A stretch of 64,000 bases of DNA, taken from positions 186,001 through 250,000 of IMG/VR virus record IMGVR_UViG_3300023174_000042. One strand, written 5' to 3'. The notes beneath the pieces were generated by a model. It was given only the letters and a program-made list of their open reading frames with translations, did no database searches and had not been told where the DNA came from. Shown one piece after another: positions 5,771 through 25,816 of the stretch; position 1 is the stretch's first letter; the number at the start of each line of letters is the position of its first letter. A program made the position numbers and the translations under genes.

Positions 5771-6631
5771 TTACTTTTTACCAATAGAAAACATTTTACC
5801 GATTGGTAATTCCATGGGTGCTTGGTCAGAAAACATTGTCAATTTTTTTGGTTTACGAATAATCATAGAATCAGATTTTTTTATTTTTTTTTTGATTGTA
5901 TTAACCAAATCTTTTTTTGACATTTTTGGTTCAATATTGTTTTCAACAATATTTTCAATTTTATCTTCCAAATATTTTTGTAAACTTTCTTTAGTTTCAC
6001 TTTTTTTATAATTTACAGTTTTCTCGGGATGTTTTTTTTCTGGCATGTTTTTATATTCTTTTTTTGTTGTAGAATCAGAAAACTCTTTTGCCATTTTACA
6101 CCATTTACAATTTTTAGAAGAACATTTATTACAACGAGCCCAAAATAAACCTTGTTGGGCTTTTGATTCGAACTTTTCGTTTAATTTAGATTCCGCAATT
6201 CCTTCATTACCTCTATCATTACAAGAATCATCGTCCATACCATCACAGGCTTGATCATTAGCATCATGAGGAGCTTCTTGCCCTGTATATGATTGTAAAG
6301 ATAAATCACCTAAAGCGTTTGAAGATGTAACATCATCAGTTTCATCTTCTTGTATTTCTTCAGTTGGGGTTGCTTTTATACCTGTGTTTGTTTTTTGAAT
6401 TACCATTTTTTTACCTGGAACTTCAGGTATTGTAGTTCCTTTTTCTAAATCGGCGTTTGGTATTTCATAACTGGTTGTAACTTTTTGTGTAACCGCTTCT
6501 TTATTTTCTCTTTTGTTTAGTTTTTTGAACTTTTCAACCAACAAACCAAATTGTTTATTAGACAATGACGAAATTGTATTAGAAGATAATCCGTTCTCAA
6601 GCAAAAATAAAATATTTTTTTTAGTTTTCAT
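5771..6631 (-). CDS. hypothetical head-associated protein
   Basis: Probable start MKTKKNILFLLE at 6631; acidic middle, Cys cluster (CNKC...CKWC), internal (I/L)xE motifs; directly upstream of terL. Confidence 0.6.
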   Translation of the reverse strand: MKTKKNILFLLENGLSSNTISSLSNKQFGLLVEKFKKLNKRENKEAVTQKVTTSYEIPNADLEKGTTIPEVPGKKMVIQKTNTGIKATPTEEIQEDETDDVTSSNALGDLSLQSYTGQEAPHDANDQACDGMDDDSCNDRGNEGIAESKLNEKFESKAQQGLFWARCNKCSSKNCKWCKMAKEFSDSTTKKEYKNMPEKKHPEKTVNYKKSETKESLQKYLEDKIENIVENNIEPKMSKKDLVNTIKKKIKKSDSMIIRKPKKLTMFSDQAPMELPIGKMFSIGKK

Positions 6632-17594: not shown

Positions 17595-18002
17595 GGGCCT
17601 ATATCGGAATTGACGGGCGTTGGTTGAATAAAAGAAGCATGTAGGGACTAAGTTAATCTCTTTAAAAACTGACTTAGAAAACAACTGGCAATGTGCTAAA
17701 CAAAATGGAAACTCTTGGTTTACTAAGAGGTTCTGAAGTTACTGTAGCTTAAGAAGTTTACGGAAACGCGAGCCGGTTCACATACGCTCAGGAACAGAAG
17801 TGATGAAGGTGAAATACAACTGAACCATAAATCGAGTTGTCTATTGGTTTTTAATTTACGATAGTGAAGAACAAATTAAAATTGTTTTTGATCAAGTAAA
17901 AATCAAATATTTTGGGGTATTAGAAAATACCAACCTAAACATGTAGTTGTCTTTTAGACAAAACGAGCCGGACGAGGGAGTCGGAGCCCTCTAGGTCCAC
18001 CA
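17595..18002 (+). ncRNA. ssrA: tmRNA
   Basis: 5' GGGCCTA pairs with 3' TAGGTCC-A-CCA, giving the G3:U70 Ala identity pair; GGAATTGAC D-loop analog; internal tag ORF at 17687-17752; TATATTTG promoter upstream and terminator downstream. Confidence 0.93.
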
Positions 18003-18132: not shown

Positions 18133-18940
18133 ACGCTGAGATTACACGTCGTGTTTGAGAACCTTTAGAGTCATTATTGTTTCTACTCTTATCCACTTTC
18201 TTTTGGAAAGTATTTCTCAGTGCTGGTTATTTAGGTGAACCACTCCTTGAGATCTTATCTACTCTCTTACTACTCGATACTCTTCGAGGATGCCTCCCCA
18301 ATTGATCCTTGCGGGACTAGAGATCTTTTGTAAAACTACACTCGGTCTTGGGAACCTAATGTGCCACGGACAACCCGTGACTAAGTAAGCACCTTTCAAC
18401 AAGATCTGACGGACACTTTTCCTTATTTATAATTAATTGTTTAATGATAATTAAGTTTTGTGTCGTGGATTGTCGAAGTAGTGGTCCGCCACCAGAGCCA
18501 ACCCATCTTTTGAACGAGTCGATACTCAACTACTCCGTGAAATGTCCCCATTTCCATACTTCAAGAACTCTTCGAATTATTACCTTGGTGGGTAATTAAT
18601 AAGGACGATGTCAGCACCACCTGTTACTCATCTTGTCTTTCGACGTTAAGATTCCTTTGATATTGGAACTCGCAATTAAAGTGTTGGAGCACTTAGTTTT
18701 GCAAAAATCCCTACGAGTTATTCCTATTGGTGTCCCCACCTCAATTAGACGACCCACATCGCCCAATCATCTAACCACTTTCCCTACAGCGTCGCCCTCG
18801 GTACTAAAGGTTAAACGGTATCCCGCTTGTGTACTCGACCTCAATTATCCGAAGACAACTAAGACGCAAACCATATAACACAAATGGTTCACTTTATCCC
18901 ACTTTCGTGGTTTATTTTAATGGACCATACACGGCCCAAT
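18133..18940 (-). ncRNA. large structured ncRNA, GOLLD-like
   Basis: ~810 nt, GC-richer than its flanks, no credible ORF, dense hairpins with GNRA loops on the minus strand (CCAC-GAAA-GTGG, GTC-GAAA-GAC, TCCC-GCAA-GGA); own promoter and boxA. Family assignment rests on size and context only. Confidence 0.65.
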
Positions 18941-19468: not shown

Positions 19469-20770
19469 TTAGAGAACTTTTTTCATGATATTTTTTATAT
19501 TATGGATTTCATAAATTAATTCTTCATTTATTTCTTTTACTTTTGAAGTTGAAATTGCTGGAGGTGCAATATTTTTTGTCGTCAACGTTCTTTTGATACC
19601 TTCACCAGTTCCCCATTTTTTTAAATCTGAAGAACAATTCGTTGCTATGTTTATTGCTCCAATATCTTTCTTTAATCCATTCACAATACAACCATAATTA
19701 CCATTCATCAAAGTTTGAGCCGTGGCATCAATACCATCAGACTCAGATTTATAATTTCTAACGCCACCTAAACATTTTCCTTCTTTTCTTTTTAAACAAT
19801 TCCAAAAAGAAGATCCTTCTTTTTTTTGTGTTGTATTAAAAGGGTTAAATGTTGATTTAGCACCTTCGGCTTGTCTCCATGCGTAAAAAAATAATAAATT
19901 TTGTGGTGACTCAGGTGCCCCAATTTTTTTTAACACTTGAGAGTAAAACTCATCATCTGTTTGTGCGGGTTTTGTTATTTTATAATCACTTATAGACGTT
20001 GTTTGACTTGTTTGACTTGATTGGTCAGAATCTAATGTTTGCTCTTCTTTAGATGACACAGAAGTGGTCGGTTGATCTTTAAATCCAAAAAACTTTTTCC
20101 ATTGATCACTACCTTTTGAAACACGGTCACTAATACCAAGACTTGAAGTAATCTGACTTACAAAATCGTTAATTGAAAAATCTTTTGTTTTTTTATCTTG
20201 ACTTGATTGACTTGATTGATCTTGACTTGATGTATCATCAGATTCAGGTGCTGAAGTATCTACAGTGATTTTTTCTTTCAAATATGAGTCACAATTTTTG
20301 TCTCTGTTTGGTCCTGATCCACAGAATGTAAAATGCCAAGGTTCTCCAACCGCCTTTCCCTCTCCCCATGTCCAACCATATTTTTCTCCATTCTCTTTAA
20401 TCCATTTTTGAACGTTTGATGGCGATATATCAATTGCTCTACCCCATCCGTGATTTGAACTTCCAGGATAAGCCGCCGCAGTTCCTGCTGTCCCCTTTTT
20501 TCTTTTTTTTCCCGTTTTTTCATAATGGTCAAAATCAAAAATTTTACACTGAACATTCAAAGGTCTATAAGAATCTGATAATTTAACTGAACTTTTTATT
20601 TCACTTGGCATATCAGAATACATTTTTATAAATGCGTTTGCTGCGTCTGTTTGTAATTTATGATTACCAATACCAAGAGATTTTAGTTGGGAATTACTAA
20701 TACATCCACTCGCATCTCCAAAACCTGAGCATGGATCGGAAGAACTACAAGCCGATTTTGTAACTTTCAT
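19469..20770 (-). CDS. two-domain peptidoglycan hydrolase (M15B/VanY-like peptidase plus lysozyme-like domain)
   Basis: SYR...AAYPGSSNHGWGRAID...EPWH (M15B); Ser/Gln linker; AWRQAEG...FNPFNTT...GVRNY C-terminal domain. Confidence 0.8.
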   Translation of the reverse strand: MKVTKSACSSSDPCSGFGDASGCISNSQLKSLGIGNHKLQTDAANAFIKMYSDMPSEIKSSVKLSDSYRPLNVQCKIFDFDHYEKTGKKRKKGTAGTAAAYPGSSNHGWGRAIDISPSNVQKWIKENGEKYGWTWGEGKAVGEPWHFTFCGSGPNRDKNCDSYLKEKITVDTSAPESDDTSSQDQSSQSSQDKKTKDFSINDFVSQITSSLGISDRVSKGSDQWKKFFGFKDQPTTSVSSKEEQTLDSDQSSQTSQTTSISDYKITKPAQTDDEFYSQVLKKIGAPESPQNLLFFYAWRQAEGAKSTFNPFNTTQKKEGSSFWNCLKRKEGKCLGGVRNYKSESDGIDATAQTLMNGNYGCIVNGLKKDIGAINIATNCSSDLKKWGTGEGIKRTLTTKNIAPPAISTSKVKEINEELIYEIHNIKNIMKKVL

Positions 20771-20791: not shown

Positions 20792-21259
20792 TCAAAACCA
20801 TTCAGGAATTTCTCTATTTTTCCATTTAGCAAACTCTTTTTTTGCCCCACGATAATAATTTCTGTAGGATTCTACCACATCACCAACTTTATATTCGTCA
20901 GGCATTGCTTTAGGTGGTGTGGTGAAGTTTTTATCTGCGATATTTGGTTTATTAGACAAGCACCATTCTATAACATCTTGTGACTTGTGTCTTTTACCAT
21001 AACGATATGTATATTCTTTACACAACTCTAAACCAAGATCACATAAATAAAGATAATTAGATAATGACTCACGAACCCATATGGCACAAGGATGATTTTT
21101 ATGTGATAACTTGTAGGGAACTTGGGGGGTAACTTGGGGGGTCATATGGTGAACTCCACATAAAAGTTGTGCGGTTTCCAATATCATTTTAACAACGTGT
21201 TTATCGCAATGATATTTAGCACATTTATTAGTGTCAAAATCCAAAAAGAAAATGTTCAT
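20792..21259 (-). CDS. pyrimidine-dimer DNA glycosylase / endonuclease V-like family protein
   Basis: MNIFFLD...CDKHVVKMILETAQLL...HKNHPCAIW...EYTYRYGKRH. Confidence 0.75.
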   Translation of the reverse strand: MNIFFLDFDTNKCAKYHCDKHVVKMILETAQLLCGVHHMTPQVTPQVPYKLSHKNHPCAIWVRESLSNYLYLCDLGLELCKEYTYRYGKRHKSQDVIEWCLSNKPNIADKNFTTPPKAMPDEYKVGDVVESYRNYYRGAKKEFAKWKNREIPEWF

Positions 21260-22812: not shown

Positions 22813-22848
22813 TTTTTTTCTTTTTTTTTAATTAAACAATATTTTTTG

Positions 22849-22935
22849 CGGTCTCGAAGGGAGTCGAACCCTCTTTTTCGTTTACCTACTTGCTACCGTG
22901 ACAGGGTAGTGCACCAACCATTATGCGCCGAGACC
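22849..22935 (-). tRNA. tRNA-Asp(GTC) with an unusually long variable region
   Basis: Acceptor GGTCTCG/CGAGACC, G73, anticodon arm CTACC-CTGTCAC-GGTAG, T-loop TTCGACT, ~19-nt variable region. Confidence 0.85.
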
Positions 22936-23242: not shown

Positions 23243-23713
23243 TTATAATGATTGCACTTGTTCCATAATTTCTGATACTTCATGAGGTTCTAAATAACCA
23301 ATCACATCGTTTGTCACAGAAGTTTCATAAGTTAGTTTTCCATCTTTATCTAAAACAGCAACTTCAAACAAACCATCTTTACCACCGTAAGAAAATGTGT
23401 GAGACACAACACTAACACCAAATCCATTATCAAACTGTAGTCTTGCTTGTTTTCCAACCATGTGTGGAGCATCATCAAGCATTTCAAATTCCAGATCTTC
23501 AAATTTTTTCATAACTTTTATTTTTTTTGTTTCTTTTAATACTGTTTTTGCACAAGCTTTGCCAAATGAAAATCCACCTTGACTTTCATGATTTGTAGGA
23601 AAACTATTTGAGTCATAATAATTTCCGTCAGTTAAAGATAATTCTAACCAAACGGCAGTTTTTGGATTTATCTTGTCTCCACATTTTTCACAATAAATTA
23701 TTTTGTCATTCAT
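23243..23713 (-). CDS. hypothetical protein (possibly two fused small domains)
   Basis: N-terminal CxxC...C part and a C-terminal FDNGFGVSVV...SYGG...FEVAVL...DVIGYL domain; TATCTTTG promoter. Confidence 0.7.
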   Translation of the reverse strand: MNDKIIYCEKCGDKINPKTAVWLELSLTDGNYYDSNSFPTNHESQGGFSFGKACAKTVLKETKKIKVMKKFEDLEFEMLDDAPHMVGKQARLQFDNGFGVSVVSHTFSYGGKDGLFEVAVLDKDGKLTYETSVTNDVIGYLEPHEVSEIMEQVQSL

Positions 23714-23784
23714 TAAACAAAGATAAATAGAATATTTTATACTATCAAATTTTTTACAAAAAAAAATTTACAATTTAAGGTTTG

Positions 23785-23856
23785 TAGCCCATCCCGGTAA
23801 CGCTCCGAGATTTGTTGGATGAAAACCAACTGTCCTTACTTTTAGACGAATGGGCC
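23785..23856 (-). tRNA. tRNA-Glu(TTC) with a non-canonical T-loop
   Basis: GGCCCAT/ATGGGCT acceptor, GTTGG-TTTTCAT-CCAAC anticodon arm, T-loop AGCGTTA. Confidence 0.8.
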
Positions 23857-23863
23857 GTAAATT

Positions 23864-23924
23864 AGGGTAGACACGGGCTTAGCTAGCCGTCTTTCAGGAA
23901 AAGCCCTTTTTCATATTCTACCCT
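23864..23924 (-). ncRNA. candidate ~60-nt structured RNA between tRNAs
   Basis: AGGGTAGA/TCTACCCT closing stem with an inner GGGCTT/AAGCCC stem. Confidence 0.45.
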
Positions 23925-23929
23925 ACTTG

Positions 23930-24002
<73 letters not shown>

Positions 24003-24007
24003 ATGTG

Positions 24008-24081
24008 TAGTTAATACTGGACTCGAACCAATGACCTATTCCGTATCAGGGAATCGCTCTAACCAACTGAGCTAATTAACT
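24008..24081 (-). tRNA. tRNA-Ile(GAT)
   Basis: Canonical cloverleaf; anticodon arm ATTCC-CTGATAC-GGAAT. Confidence 0.92.
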
Positions 24082-24094
24082 ATTAATATTTTCG

Positions 24095-24175
24095 TACTGA
24101 CGGTTGGATTCGAACCAACGTTTTCAACTTACCACTACAGGTATAGATGATATAAGCATCCACTGGTACGCCAGC
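24095..24175 (-). tRNA. D-armless tRNA-like RNA, apparent anticodon TAT
   Basis: Acceptor GCTGGCG/CGTCAGT and a perfect T arm; only 7 nt before the GGATG-CTTATAT-CATCT arm; 25-nt variable region. Confidence 0.6.
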
Positions 24176-24182
24176 TTATTTG

Positions 24183-24254
24183 TGGTATGGGAGTGGATTC
24201 GAACCACCGGCACAAGTTTTTCACACTTTGCTCTACCTACTGAGCTACCACACC
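24183..24254 (-). tRNA. tRNA-Phe(GAA), aberrant
   Basis: Canonical D and T loops; 4-bp anticodon stem AAGT-GTGAAAA-ACTT; one extra C between T stem and acceptor stem. Confidence 0.65.
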
Positions 24255-24359
24255 ATTTTTTTGTAATTAATAGTTGATACACACTCTCGTTTCACCATCT
24301 TGTATCAACAGGTTAATGTACTTTACGAGTTTCCCTTTTCTTACAATCACAATATTTTT

Positions 24360-24466
24360 AAATCAAAGAACTTTTTCCCTTTTGTGGTGGGGGTGAGACC
24401 ACCATCACACTTTCTCACCCCCTTGTTTGTTATACAAATATATGTAGTTTATTTTAAACTGACAAA
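24360..24466 (-). promoter_or_regulatory. promoter, leader hairpin and boxA-like element of the tRNA operon
   Basis: TTTG...TATATTTG promoter, GGGGGTGAGA/TCTCACCCCC hairpin, then GTTCTTTGAT. Confidence 0.7.
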
Positions 24467-24554
24467 TCTTTATTAAACTTTTTTTTAATTTGTCTAAAAA
24501 TAAAAAACCCCACCTCTTTTCGAAGATGGGGTCGTAAAAGGTCATAAATAAAAT

Positions 24555-25304
24555 TTAAATAACTTCTCTTGTGTCAATATGTGCCTCATACATTAATCTT
24601 CTTGTTGATAAAGATCTGTAATAATAATAGTCTTCCAAAATAGACTCAAACAAACCGCTCACAAATCCTGATGCCGCATCCCAAGCATTTGAAAGTCCTT
24701 TCCCAACTGCCTGTGCCCCGCTTTGAATAGCGCTTCCTACCGCTTGAGCTCCTTTTTTAATTCCTTGTCCTACAGCTTGAACACCACCTTTAACAAAGTT
24801 GTATGCTTTATTCAACATGTTTCCTGCAAATTGTTTTACGTAAGACCAAAGTTCAGCAATTTTTGAGGCGGCGATAACTGCGGCCCCCCAAGCGGCTTGT
24901 CCTAATTTCCATATGGCATCAAACATAGATTTAAAAAATTGTAATATGTTTGTAGATGCTTTACTGATAAAACTAGAAATTTGATTTGCGGTATATTTAA
25001 TGGTTTGAGCGGCACCAATTACTATACCTTTAACTTGTTTTGCAAGTGCGGTTAAAAAACTCAAAATAACATTTCCAATTGCCTGTGCCACTTTAAAAGT
25101 AGCCTGACCAAGTTTAATTCCAACAATTGCAGGAAGAAAAATGATTGTCAATGAAATTTGACCAATTTTAATTACCGTTTGTTTGACAGCTTTACCAGCC
25201 TGAAAGCCAGCTTTGAATGCCGCGCTTTGGACATTTTGTTCTGAAATAACTTGTTTGATAACTTTTATCAAATCATTTTCAGTTAATTTTATTACCTTTT
25301 TCAT
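24555..25304 (-). CDS. tagged amphipathic Ala/Gly-rich helical-repeat protein
   Basis: MKKVIKLTENDLIKVIKQVISE tag; 11-residue GAQAVG repeats; hydrophobic segments. Confidence 0.75.
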   Translation of the reverse strand: MKKVIKLTENDLIKVIKQVISEQNVQSAAFKAGFQAGKAVKQTVIKIGQISLTIIFLPAIVGIKLGQATFKVAQAIGNVILSFLTALAKQVKGIVIGAAQTIKYTANQISSFISKASTNILQFFKSMFDAIWKLGQAAWGAAVIAASKIAELWSYVKQFAGNMLNKAYNFVKGGVQAVGQGIKKGAQAVGSAIQSGAQAVGKGLSNAWDAASGFVSGLFESILEDYYYYRSLSTRRLMYEAHIDTREVI

Positions 25305-25360: not shown

Positions 25361-25816
25361 TCATCGACAATGGTAATCTGCAGCTCTTGTTGCGATTTGA
25401 TTATCAGGTTTTATATTTGCCTTATAACCCAATGACGTAACCAATCCAACGGCAGGAGATACGAGTTTTGAACTAAAATGTTTTTCTTGTGAATTATAGT
25501 CCAAATCGATCTCAATTTTTACACTTATTTTACTTGACAACCAATTTGCGACCTCAACAGAATGTTCACATTCAGTCCAAAGACGTGTCCATTTATCTTT
25601 TATTTTTCTTACCTTTTGTTTATGATAAATGTAATGAACACCCCTGTTTCCAAATCTATATGCAATTGCTGTTACATATACAGTATTTCTTCTGTGATTT
25701 TGTGAATCAGTTCCTATATGGATTTCTACATATGGACATTCTTTTAAAATATCAATTGTATGATTTACTATATCAAAAACAGCGTCTCCTTCTACTTTTT
25801 TAAATACCCTGTTCAT
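25361..25816 (-). CDS. RNase H-like YkuK (DUF458) family protein
   Basis: IHIGTDSQ...RLWTE---SVEVA...EIDLDYN...IKPD--IA--AAD. Confidence 0.85.
   Translation of the reverse strand: MNRVFKKVEGDAVFDIVNHTIDILKECPYVEIHIGTDSQNHRRNTVYVTAIAYRFGNRGVHYIYHKQKVRKIKDKWTRLWTECEHSVEVANWLSSKISVKIEIDLDYNSQEKHFSSKLVSPAVGLVTSLGYKANIKPDNQIATRAADYHCR

What the first reader, a model, noticed from the sequence alone, without database searches (positions are those of the whole stretch)
24095..24175. D-armless tRNA-like RNA with apparent UAU anticodon
Seen: intact acceptor and T arms, no D arm (7-nt linker TACCAGT), a CT-TAT-AT loop and a 25-nt variable region whose TGGTA could pair with the 5' TACCA. Known: bacteria normally read AUA with lysidine-modified CAU, and D-armless tRNAs are mainly mitochondrial. 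Inference: a novel tRNA architecture, or a decoy for anticodon nucleases.
Basis: partly seen in the sequence, partly recalled or inferred. Interest (0 to 1): 0.66.

Follow-up and report, generated by a model that had tools for sequence, protein, structure and literature searches.

The report
Phage tRNA-Ile with rearranged D arm
This 82-base gene in a freshwater jumbo phage is very likely a working isoleucine tRNA (anticodon UAU, reads AUA) from a widespread phage-only class in which the anticodon arm is nested inside the D stem and the D loop follows it, a layout that standard tRNA finders miss.

Summary
The element is real. It lies on the minus strand at 24175..24094, in a tight tRNA array (Phe, element, Ile-GAU, fMet-like, Glu). 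It is not a decayed one-off. Pattern scans and a covariance model found 83 distinct relatives in 55 fetched loci plus the window, nearly all from uncultured viral contigs.

Every helix shows compensatory changes. This includes a new 3-bp helix (RNA positions 11-13 with 36-38) that encloses the anticodon arm. Right after that helix comes a D-loop-like UAGYGG(U)A segment. Its R15 equivalent covaries with the base before the T stem, as in the tRNA Levitt pair (G:C 57, A:U 25, other 1).

Family anticodons are UAU/GAU (Ile) and UCU/UCG/ACG/CCU (Arg). The base after GG (position-20 equivalent) is A in 26/26 Arg-type members and U or G in 54 of 57 Ile-type members. The discriminator is A in 57/57 Ile-type members. 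So synthetase identity marks track the anticodon.

AUA makes up 31% of this phage's Ile codons, and no other phage tRNA reads it. ARAGORN and Rfam miss the gene. I found no expression or charging data and no prior description. I rate it a new structural variant of tRNA, of high interest.

The parts
24094..24175 (-). Whole gene of the noncanonical tRNA-Ile(UAU): RNA positions 1-82, including discriminator A81 and C82. CCA is not fully encoded.
   Evidence: Sequence; covariance model R1 98.3 bits, E 2e-26
24169..24175 (-). Acceptor stem, 5' strand (G1-G7)
   Evidence: Pairs with 24096-24102. 99% of cells paired, with both-side changes in 6 of 7 pairs and 7 of 7.
24166..24168 (-). Linker U8 A9 C10. 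U8 and A9 are invariant in the family, like U8/A9 of canonical tRNA.
   Evidence: Invariant columns T8 A9 in A1; linker variants UAC/UAU/UAA/UAG(N)
24163..24165 (-). 5' strand (C11 A12 G13) of the new 3-bp helix that encloses the anticodon arm (D-stem equivalent)
   Evidence: Covaries with 24138-24140. Middle pair GC 16/AU 12/CG 2; inner pair GC 9/AU 7/UA 6/GU 3. 93% paired in 83 sequences.
24145..24161 (-). Anticodon arm: stem G15-G19 with C27-U31; loop C20-U26; anticodon U22 A23 U24 at 24154..24152
   Evidence: 97-98% paired, all 5 pairs with both-side changes. Among the 38 UAU-type members: C32 in 37, A37 in 37, pyrimidine at 38 in 37.
24141..24144 (-). Connector A32 U33 A34 C35 between the anticodon stem and the 3' strand of the new helix. 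U14 (24162) may pair with A32.
   Evidence: AUAC/AUAU is the commonest connector in UAU-type members. U14-A32 is pairable in 58% of sequences, with no covariation.
24138..24140 (-). 3' strand (C36 U37 G38) of the new helix
   Evidence: See partner strand. Its two variable pairs are in the top 17 of an all-against-all mutual-information scan.
24130..24137 (-). D-loop-like segment U39 A40 G41 U42 G43 G44 U45 A46 (equivalents of A14, R15, Y16, G18, G19, U20, A21)
   Evidence: UA[GA] and GG are conserved family-wide. G41 covaries with C56 (GC 57, AU 25, other 1). The base after GG tracks the anticodon: A in 26/26 Arg type; U or G in 54 of 57 Ile type.
24120..24129 (-). Purine-rich linker A47-C56 (AAGUUGAAAC-like). 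C56 at 24120 is the Y48 equivalent. Some relatives carry an extra hairpin here, as in a variable region.
   Evidence: Nine-nucleotide insertions that can form a small hairpin in L110:8578-8668 and L009:11715-11804.
24103..24119 (-). T arm: stem G57-G61 with C69-C73; loop UUCGAAU
   Evidence: 98-99% paired, with both-side changes in 4 of 5 pairs
24096..24102 (-). Acceptor stem, 3' strand (C74-U80)
24094..24095 (-). Discriminator A (24095) and C (24094)
   Evidence: Discriminator A in 57/57 Ile-type members; following C in 83/83
23784..24254 (-). Surrounding tRNA array: Phe 24182-24254, the element, Ile(GAU) 24007-24081, fMet-like CAU 23929-24002, Glu 23784-23856. Spacers beside the element are 6 and 12 nt.
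   Evidence: ARAGORN and Rfam; ARAGORN drawings

Best explanation
The element is a gene for a functional elongator tRNA-Ile with anticodon UAU. It belongs to a phage-borne structural class in which the D domain is re-wired.

**Layout (shown).**
- After the acceptor stem and U8 A9 N10, the chain enters a 3-bp helix.
- It runs straight into a normal anticodon arm and returns through a 3-4 nt connector to close that helix.
- Only then does it form a D-loop-like segment (A14, R15, Y16, G18 G19, N20, A21 equivalents).
- A purine-rich linker ending in the Y48 equivalent follows, then a normal T arm.
- In effect, the anticodon branch of a canonical tRNA is circularly permuted at the junction of D loop and D stem.

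**Fold and use (inferred).**
- The helix stacks under the anticodon stem, as the D stem does.
- GG docks on the T loop, and U8:A14 and R15:Y48 form, giving an ordinary L shape.
- The RNA is transcribed with the array and cut by host RNase P and 3' nucleases.
- The host CCA-adding enzyme completes it and host IleRS charges it.
- It reads AUA, a codon common in this 30% G+C phage, without needing lysidine synthesis.

**Status of the evidence.** Shown here: the sequence anatomy, the family, the covariation, the link between identity nucleotides and anticodon, and the codon usage. Inferred: the 3D fold, processing, charging and decoding.
For: **1. Family.**
- Pattern scans of viral contigs and model R1 give 83 distinct relatives in 55 fetched loci plus the window.
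- These include complete 288-476 kb phage genomes and the public record LR756502.1.

**2. Secondary structure.**
- On A1, a set chosen without using the new helix, 95.5% of cells pair against 64.6% when shuffled. The covariation score is 0.763 against 0.174, and no slid register comes close.
- On A3, 97.2% pair and the score is 0.93.
- An unbiased mutual-information scan puts 13 predicted helix pairs at the top and the R15:Y48 equivalent 14th, the top non-helical pair.

**3. Tertiary signature.** R15:Y48 equivalents are G:C in 57, A:U in 25 and other in 1.

**4. Identity marks track the anticodon**.

| Type | Discriminator | Base after GG (position 20) |
|---|---|---|
| Ile (UAU, GAU) | A in 57/57 | U or G in 54 of 57 (U in 46) |
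| Arg (UCU, UCG, ACG, CCU) | mixed | A in 26/26 |

A20 is the main bacterial ArgRS determinant, and A73 and U20 are listed Ile determinants (PMC9976931).

**5. Interchangeability.** The close relative L005 carries a member of the class with anticodon GAU where this phage and L003 have canonical tRNA-Ile(GAU).

**6. Demand.** AUA is 23.9 per 1000 codons, 31% of Ile and more than AUG. The phage's only other Ile tRNA is GAU, and its only CAU tRNA has the initiator-type C1xA72 mismatch.

**7. Purifying selection.**
- In the L002 group the flanks are unrelated but the element differs at 2 of 82 positions. One of these turns G5-U into A5-U.
- Variants in four independent freshwater metagenomes fall only at unpaired positions 10, 42, 45 and 48.
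Against: - **No expression evidence.** No RNA run holds the locus, so there is no evidence of a mature transcript or of CCA addition.
- **No charging or decoding data.**
- **Several E. coli Ile determinants in stems are not kept.** Here 4-69 is G-C, 29-41 is A-U, and position 38 is U rather than A. Hosts are unknown and probably not enterobacteria.
- **Possible miscoding.** Unmodified U34 could misread AUG.
- **Not always the only AUA reader.** LR756502.1 also carries an ARAGORN-called canonical tRNA-Ile(UAU).
- **The 3D equivalence is argued, not modelled.** It rests on conserved nucleotides and one covarying tertiary pair.
- **The re-ordering test was uninformative about pairing.** ARAGORN accepts the re-ordered sequences (81/83 against 3/83 in natural order), but it accepts a control with a reversed strand equally often.
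- **The phage supplies none of the enzymes.** It encodes no IleRS, CCA-adding enzyme or TilS, so everything depends on the host accepting this shape.
Confidence: 0.78

Rival explanations
1. It is a tRNA mimic that is not used in translation. For example, it could be a decoy or sponge for a host anticodon nuclease or another tRNA-targeting defence, or a sink for a tRNA-modifying enzyme.
For: The shape is unusual enough to be a poor substrate for some tRNA enzymes. It sits in a phage that also carries other tRNA-related RNAs, a tmRNA and GOLLD. There is no expression or charging evidence.
Against: - A decoy for an anticodon nuclease needs the anticodon loop. It does not need A73, a position-20 base that switches with the anticodon (A in 26/26 Arg type), an R15:Y48 pair, or an intact 12-bp acceptor/T stack.
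- The anticodons match A-ending codons that this A+T-rich phage uses heavily: AUA 23.9 and AGA 23.3 per 1000.
- A member of the class replaces a canonical tRNA-Ile(GAU) at the same array position in L005.
Confidence: 0.1
2. It is a real tRNA, but the unusual shape gives it a different identity or special handling. Possibilities include charging by a synthetase other than IleRS, use only with particular modification states, or near-orthogonality to some host enzymes.
For: Several E. coli Ile determinants in stems and at position 38 are absent. The class is restricted mainly to Ile and Arg anticodons, with a few CAU and Tyr-like members, which hints at something specific to certain synthetases.
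Against: UAU-type and GAU-type members share A73 and mostly U at position 20. Arg-type members switch to A20. This is the pattern expected for ordinary Ile and Arg identities.
Confidence: 0.07
3. It is a decayed or rearranged tRNA pseudogene, or an assembly artefact, with no function.
For: tRNA finders reject it. A minimum-free-energy fold of the single sequence is only marginally better than shuffles (z -1.5).
Against: - There are 83 distinct relatives with compensatory changes in every helix.
- A contig of an independent study spans it without any difference (record 14). The locus is held in runs from 10 studies.
- The element is conserved where its flanks are not.
Confidence: 0.02
4. It is a tRNA-like element with a role in DNA or RNA processing, such as an integration site, a processing signal in the array, or a primer.
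For: tRNA-like shapes serve such roles elsewhere. Two of the five large carrier records are classed as proviruses by IMG/VR.
Against: - None of these roles explains a canonical 7-nt anticodon loop restricted to Ile/Arg anticodons, or identity nucleotides that covary with it.
- The element lies inside arrays of up to 20-30 tRNA genes in genomes with terminal repeats.
Confidence: 0.03

Closest known systems
Canonical bacterial and phage tRNA-Ile (GAU major species; CAU/lysidine minor species)
   Same: - 7-bp acceptor stem and 5-bp T stem with a UUCRANY loop.
- 5-bp anticodon stem with a 7-nt loop (U33, A37).
- U8 and A9; equivalents of A14, R15, G18 G19 and A21; R15:Y48 covariation; A73.
- Placement in a tRNA array.
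   Different: - No D stem-loop between positions 9 and 26.
- The D-stem equivalent is 3 bp and is closed by the anticodon arm rather than by the D loop. The D loop lies 3' of the anticodon arm.
- The gene is 82 nt.
- Anticodon UAU rather than GAU or CAU.
- No Rfam tRNA match is listed even at E up to 10, and ARAGORN misses it.
Natural bacterial tRNA-Ile(UAU) (Mycoplasma mobile, PMC3575796; Bacillus subtilis tilS-deletion suppressor, PMC3919564)
   Same: Reads AUA through U34, with no need for lysidine.
   Different: I take those to be ordinary cloverleaf tRNAs of cells; this rests on my own knowledge, as I did not open the papers. This one is phage-borne and has the rearranged D domain. Its position 38 is a pyrimidine in 37 of 38 UAU-type members.
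D-arm-lacking mitochondrial tRNAs (e.g. nematode mt-tRNA-Ser, PMC7609411)
   Same: No stem-loop between the acceptor and anticodon stems.
   Different: Mitochondrial forms replace the D arm with a short flexible connector, have a short variable loop and often a reduced T arm, and lose the D-loop/T-loop contacts. Here the full T arm, GG, the R15:Y48 pair and a D-stem-like helix are all retained, and the RNA is longer than normal, not shorter.
allo-tRNAs and (8/4)/(9/3) tRNAs of bacteria and phages (PMC5389517)
   Same: Noncanonical tRNA classes found by metagenome mining, some in phage tRNA clusters. UAU is a frequent allo-tRNA anticodon.
   Different: Those change the acceptor/T split (8/4, 9/3) and have long variable arms. 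I take them to keep a D arm; that rests on my own knowledge and was not read. This class keeps 7/5 and re-wires the D domain.
Circularly permuted tRNA genes of Cyanidioschyzon merolae (PMC3728597)
   Same: The order of tRNA segments in the gene differs from the canonical order.
   Different: There the whole gene is permuted. From my own knowledge (not read here), processing restores a canonical mature tRNA. Here the termini are normal and only the inner anticodon branch is permuted, so the mature RNA itself should keep the new topology (inference).
tRNA-like domain of tmRNA
   Same: Acceptor stem plus T arm, with a D-loop analogue that lacks a conventional D stem. A weak Rfam tmRNA 3'-end match covers the T arm (5.8 bits).
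   Different: tmRNA has no anticodon arm and is charged with Ala. The match is far below threshold (47 bits).

Membership tests
tRNA, canonical cloverleaf (Rfam RF00005) | 7-bp acceptor stem stacked on a 5-bp T stem, with a 7-nt T loop UUCRANY | tested here: met
tRNA, canonical cloverleaf (Rfam RF00005) | 5-bp anticodon stem and 7-nt loop with U33 and a purine at 37 | tested here: met
   Loop CUUAUAU; stem covaries
tRNA, canonical cloverleaf (Rfam RF00005) | D stem-loop located between positions 9 and 26 | tested here: not met
   Only U8 A9 C10 and then the helix strand that leads into the anticodon arm
tRNA, canonical cloverleaf (Rfam RF00005) | Score at or above the curated threshold (29 bits), or an ARAGORN default call | tested here: not met
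   No tRNA match listed at gathering or at E up to 10. ARAGORN default finds nothing.
tRNA, canonical cloverleaf (Rfam RF00005) | Core tertiary nucleotides: U8, A14, R15:Y48, G18 G19, A21 | tested here: met
   All are present, but A14-A21 lie 3' of the anticodon arm. R15:Y48 equivalents: GC 57 / AU 25 / other 1.
tRNA, canonical cloverleaf (Rfam RF00005) | Aminoacylation and use on the ribosome | not testable with these tools
   No RNA runs hold the locus
Bacterial isoleucine identity set (PMC9976931) | A73, A35, U36, A37 | tested here: met
   A73 in 57/57 Ile-type members. A37 in 37/38 UAU-type and 17/19 GAU-type.
Bacterial isoleucine identity set (PMC9976931) | D-loop U20 | tested here: met
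   U follows GG here and in 46 of 57 Ile-type members, against 0 of 26 Arg-type
Bacterial isoleucine identity set (PMC9976931) | C4-G69, C29-G41, A38, U12-A23 (E. coli set) | tested here: not met
   Here G4-C69, A29-U41 and U38. There is an A12-U37 pair in the helix, but with the opposite strand order.
D-arm-lacking mitochondrial-type tRNA | D arm replaced by a short unstructured connector; D-loop/T-loop contacts lost; overall size reduced | tested here: not met
   D-loop-like segment, GG and a covarying helix are retained; the gene is 82 nt
allo-tRNA / (8/4),(9/3) tRNAs | Acceptor stem of 8 or 9 bp with a T stem of 4 or 3 bp | tested here: not met
   7/5 split with covariation in both stems
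The noncanonical phage tRNA class defined here (model R1) | U8 A9 N, a 3-bp helix enclosing the anticodon arm, UA-R-N-GG directly 3' of the helix, and a linker ending in Y that covaries with R | tested here: met
   98.3 bits; every feature is present in the window copy

The most novel reading that the evidence does not exclude
Phages, mostly large uncultured ones from water and other environments, carry a previously unrecognised structural class of functional tRNAs. In this class the anticodon branch is circularly permuted, with the anticodon arm nested in the D stem and the D loop after it.

The class serves Ile (UAU, GAU) and Arg (UCU, UCG, ACG, CCU), and possibly Met/Ile2 (CAU) and Tyr. It keeps the L shape and the synthetase identity marks. 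Standard tRNA finders do not see it.

The altered D domain may also make these tRNAs poor substrates for host tRNA-directed nucleases or for particular modification enzymes.
Probability: 0.55. Interest if true: 0.9.

Novelty: new variant of a known kind. Interest (0 to 1): 0.85.

Why it matters
- **tRNA structure.** If these RNAs are charged and used, the cloverleaf connectivity is not obligatory even outside mitochondria. RNase P, the CCA-adding enzyme, IleRS/ArgRS, EF-Tu and the bacterial ribosome would all accept a tRNA whose D stem has swapped strand connectivity. That gives a natural test of which parts of the tRNA core are read as shape and which as chain topology.
- **Annotation.** Phage tRNA inventories are undercounted exactly for AUA and AGA/CGN decoders, because ARAGORN called 3 of 83 members and no Rfam tRNA match was listed for this copy. 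This affects analyses of phage codon usage against tRNA supply. It also leaves published huge-phage genomes such as LR756502.1 with unannotated tRNA genes.
- **Phage-host conflict and engineering.** A scaffold with a re-wired D domain is a candidate for escaping host tRNA-targeting defences. It is also a possible starting point for orthogonal tRNA design. Both ideas are speculative.

Tried and rejected
- **Standard finders.** ARAGORN at default settings and Rfam at gathering or E up to 10 give no tRNA call.
- **ARAGORN alternatives.**
  - At an 80% threshold it draws a cloverleaf with a 2-bp D stem and a 4-base anticodon AUAC.
  - In mitochondrial mode it draws a 59-nt tRNA that overlaps tRNA-Phe.
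  - I rejected both because covariation in relatives supports the UAU hairpin and the 7-bp acceptor stem.
No better than shuffled columns.
- **BLAST against 50,697 phage records.** No close relative of the region, and only two uncultured huge phages for the element.
- **One wasted scan.** A viral-contig scan used the wrong spacing, and its 23 hits are chance.
- **Genome-collection scan for GTAGYGG...GGTTCGAATCC.** It returned mainly Ser/Leu-type tRNAs with long variable arms. In the rows I could read (the output was cut), the only family members are in L271, an 18-kb contig of a Saprospiraceae MAG with phage-like content.
- **Model R1 on 151 genomes of that order.** Only that same contig matched. 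The tool scored only 30 candidates per genome, so this means 'not found in those searched', not 'absent'.
- **In-silico re-ordering into canonical order.** ARAGORN accepts 81/83, but it also accepts 81/83 controls with a reversed strand. The test shows only that the pieces have tRNA-like sizes.
- **Expression evidence.** No RNA runs hold the locus, and laying contigs gave DNA-level confirmation only.
- **Phage-encoded IleRS, CCA-adding enzyme, TilS.** None found.
- **Literature.** Eight full-text searches and three papers consulted. I found no description of this layout. One search call failed on a syntax rule.

Full report
**Setting.** The window is bases 186001-250000 of a 272,576-bp IMG/VR virus record with 30% G+C, estimated 93% complete. 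The same DNA occurs in freshwater and lake metagenomes from 10 studies. No RNA run holds it. The region is a small-RNA island:
- tmRNA at 17595-18002 (+) and GOLLD RNA at 18133-18537 (-);
- six tRNAs called by ARAGORN and Rfam: Asp, Glu, CAU, Ile-GAU, Phe, Ser.

The finding lies in the 100-nt gap between tRNA-Phe (24182-24254) and tRNA-Ile(GAU) (24007-24081), on the same minus strand.

**Observation.** Read on the minus strand, 24175..24094 has these parts:
- a 7-bp acceptor stem;
- the triplet UAC, then CAG, then U;
- a 5-bp stem with the loop CUUAUAU;
- AUAC, then CUG;
- UAGUGGUA followed by a purine-rich stretch that ends in C;
- a 5-bp T stem with loop UUCGAAU;
- the acceptor 3' strand, then A and C.

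ARAGORN at default settings gives nothing, and Rfam lists no tRNA match at the gathering threshold or at E up to 10. ARAGORN's low-threshold alternatives are poor. The single-sequence fold is only marginally better than shuffles (z -1.5), so the case rests on comparison with relatives.

**Relatives.**
- An exact 22-mer from the anticodon region found five viral contigs.
- In two of them (L003, L005) the whole array is syntenic with the window.
- In three (L002, L004, L006; 274-291 kb phages) the flanks are unrelated but the element differs at only 2 of 82 positions. One of these changes G5-U to A5-U.
- A looser pattern that fixes only the linker and the T loop gave 58 loci. Thirty-one distinct sequences among them have the same layout with very different stems.

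That condition is not met.

**Structure from covariation.** I aligned the 31 sequences (A1). They had been selected by the linker/T-loop pattern and by acceptor and T-stem pairing only.

| Measure (A1) | Observed | Shuffled or slid control |
|---|---|---|
| Cells paired | 95.5% | 64.6% shuffled; at most 52% in any slid register |
| Covariation score | 0.763 | 0.174 shuffled |
| New helix, cells paired | 92.5% | not given per helix |

Pair types in the new helix are CG 30/AU 1, then GC 16/AU 12/CG 2, then GC 9/AU 7/UA 6/GU 3. It also competes with this helix.

**A wider family.** A covariance model (R1) scores the window copy 98.3 bits. It finds no second copy in this genome, but finds one to several per genome in five 288-476 kb phages. 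Across the fetched loci it gives 83 distinct members at E up to 1e-8 (A3).
- On A3, 97.2% of cells pair and the covariation score is 0.93.
- A3 was fitted to the model, so it leans towards the model's structure.
- An all-against-all mutual-information scan is independent of the structure given. Thirteen predicted helix pairs rank first.

**The D loop is there, but after the anticodon arm.** Directly 3' of the helix, every member has U-A-R-N(1-3)-G-G-N-(A). This is the A14 R15 Y16 G18 G19 N20 A21 pattern of a D loop. Two tests support the reading.
- *Levitt-pair equivalent.* The R (G41 here) covaries with the last base before the T stem (C56 here): G:C 57, A:U 25, other 1. This is the signature of the R15:Y48 tertiary pair, and it is the highest-ranking non-helical pair in the mutual-information scan.
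- *Position-20 equivalent.* The base after GG depends on the anticodon: A in 26/26 members with Arg anticodons (UCU 12, UCG 8, ACG 5, CCU 1), and U or G in 54 of 57 members with Ile anticodons (UAU 38, GAU 19). A20 is the main determinant for bacterial ArgRS, and U20 and A73 are listed Ile determinants (PMC9976931).

The discriminator is A in 57/57 Ile-type members and mixed in Arg-type members. U8 and A9 are invariant. Some members carry a 9-nt insertion that can form a small hairpin in the purine-rich linker. From my own knowledge, the variable region is where canonical tRNAs tolerate insertions.

**Interpretation of the topology (inference).**
- In a canonical tRNA the chain runs 8-9, D 5' strand, D loop, D 3' strand, 26, anticodon arm, variable loop.
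- Here it runs 8-9-10, helix strand, anticodon arm, connector, helix strand, D loop, linker.
- The strand followed by the A14 equivalent runs away from the anticodon stem, as 10-13 does. The strand that leads into the anticodon stem behaves like 22-25.
- This amounts to a circular permutation of the anticodon branch, opened between 21 and 22 and closed between the start of the variable loop and position 10.
- From my own knowledge of tRNA structure, U8 sits at the elbow-side end of the D stem in canonical tRNA. Entry there is therefore sterically plausible.
- The 3-bp helix plus connector plus the 5-6 bp anticodon stem gives about the same stack length as D stem + 26 + anticodon stem.
- I could not model this in 3D.
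- A re-ordering test with ARAGORN showed only that the pieces have canonical sizes: 81/83 accepted after re-ordering against 3/83 in natural order, but a broken-helix control was also accepted 81/83 times.

**Function.**
- The phage uses AUA for 31% of Ile codons: 23.9 per 1000, more than AUG at 20.9.
- Its other tRNAs cannot read AUA. The CAU tRNA has the C1xA72 mismatch, which from my own knowledge marks bacterial initiator tRNAs.
- It encodes no IleRS, CCA-adding enzyme or TilS.
- In the close relative L005, a member of the class with anticodon GAU occupies the array position where the window and L003 have canonical tRNA-Ile(GAU). ARAGORN finds no canonical one in that locus.
- In the 55 fetched loci that carry members, ARAGORN finds only 2 other tRNA-Ile(UAU) genes, against 38 distinct noncanonical ones. 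These loci were fetched with Ile-type patterns, so the ratio is biased.
- UAU-type members have a pyrimidine at position 38 in 37 of 38 cases, while GAU-type members mostly have A. A weaker 32-38 combination might limit U34:G misreading of AUG. This is speculation.
- Polymorphisms in four independent metagenomes fall only at unpaired positions 10, 42, 45 and 48.

Together these points make a functional AUA-reading tRNA-Ile the best explanation. Processing, charging and decoding remain inferred.

**Distribution.**
- Members come from viral contigs of 4 kb to 476 kb, including records with terminal repeats.
- Among GenBank phage records, only two uncultured huge phages match. LR756502.1 (642 kb, unannotated) has Ile-UAU, Ile-GAU and Arg-UCU members.
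It carries a phage-like tRNA array and a helicase. No other genome of 151 sampled from that order matched.
- So the class looks phage-borne. Bacteroidota are a possible host group, but this is only weakly indicated.

**Known or new.**
- Rfam 15 has no family for it.
- Eight full-text searches turned up nothing relevant, and term searches in two papers on noncanonical tRNAs (PMC7609411, PMC5389517) showed no matching passage. The library lacks most subscription journals, so a prior description cannot be excluded.
- It is still a tRNA, so I rate it a new variant of a known kind rather than categorically new.

**Limits.**
- A3 is model-fitted.
- E-values from R1 are rough.
- There is no RNA-level evidence at all.

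Noticed in passing
window 17595-18002 (+) and 18133-18537 (-): A phage-encoded tmRNA (64.9 bits) lies next to a full-length GOLLD RNA (309 bits), a few kb from the tRNA array.
   Followed up: no
window 22848-22935 (-): tRNA-Asp(GUC) is 88 nt. It has a normal D arm plus a 19-nt unpaired variable region, CAAGUAGGUAAACGAAAAA. That region resembles the UAG.GGUAAG...GAAAAC segment of the noncanonical element. It may be an evolutionary link or a second D-loop-like module.
   Followed up: partly
window about 23860-23925 (-), between the CAU tRNA and tRNA-Glu; also L002 about 6150-6210: A conserved hairpin RNA of about 65 nt sits inside the tRNA array. Its outer stem shows compensatory changes between the window and the L002 group, and it has a conserved CCUGAAAGACGG stretch. 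The fold has z -2.5. There is no Rfam match.
   Followed up: partly
window 24255-24533 (-): Upstream of tRNA-Phe there is, in order, a terminator-like hairpin (24533-24506), a promoter-like site (24465-24437), a G+C-rich hairpin (about 24377-24425) and a leader of about 120 nt. The leader is conserved in L003 and L005. This may be the start of the array's transcription unit or another small RNA.
   Followed up: partly
L005:1993-2070 (-): A close relative of this phage has a noncanonical tRNA-Ile(GAU) at the position where the window has canonical tRNA-Ile(GAU). The neighbouring stretch (about 1811-1990) keeps only the 3' half of the fMet-like tRNA.
   Followed up: partly
L088:1319-1414, L011:2656-2751, L157:10874-10968: These are Tyr(GUA)-like members with the same outer helix and a UAGUGGA/UAUUGGA D-loop-like segment. 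They carry an extra insert whose C-run could pair with a G-run beyond the D loop, which would give a pseudoknot-like variable arm.
   Followed up: no
L009:11809-11886, L145:5432-5507: These members of the class have anticodon CAU (elongator Met, or Ile2 awaiting lysidine) and a short UCACAY linker.
   Followed up: no
L330:2782-2867, L333:2477-2563, L031:6526-6611: In huge phages there are 86-nt tRNA-Ile(GAU) genes that ARAGORN calls with a long extra arm. This is another unusual Ile tRNA form.
   Followed up: no
L328:7733-7808 (the 362-kb phage G002): ARAGORN calls a tRNA with anticodon CUA (amber-reading) in a large tRNA array. This hints at stop-codon reading in that phage. I did not examine it.
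   Followed up: no
window 25361-25816 (-), 20792-21259 (-), 19469-20770 (-): Neighbouring genes encode an RNase H-like protein (PF04308), a pyrimidine-dimer glycosylase-like protein (PF03013) and a VanY-type peptidase (PF02557). The ORFs that flank the array (24555-25304 and 23243-23713) have no clear family.
   Followed up: partly
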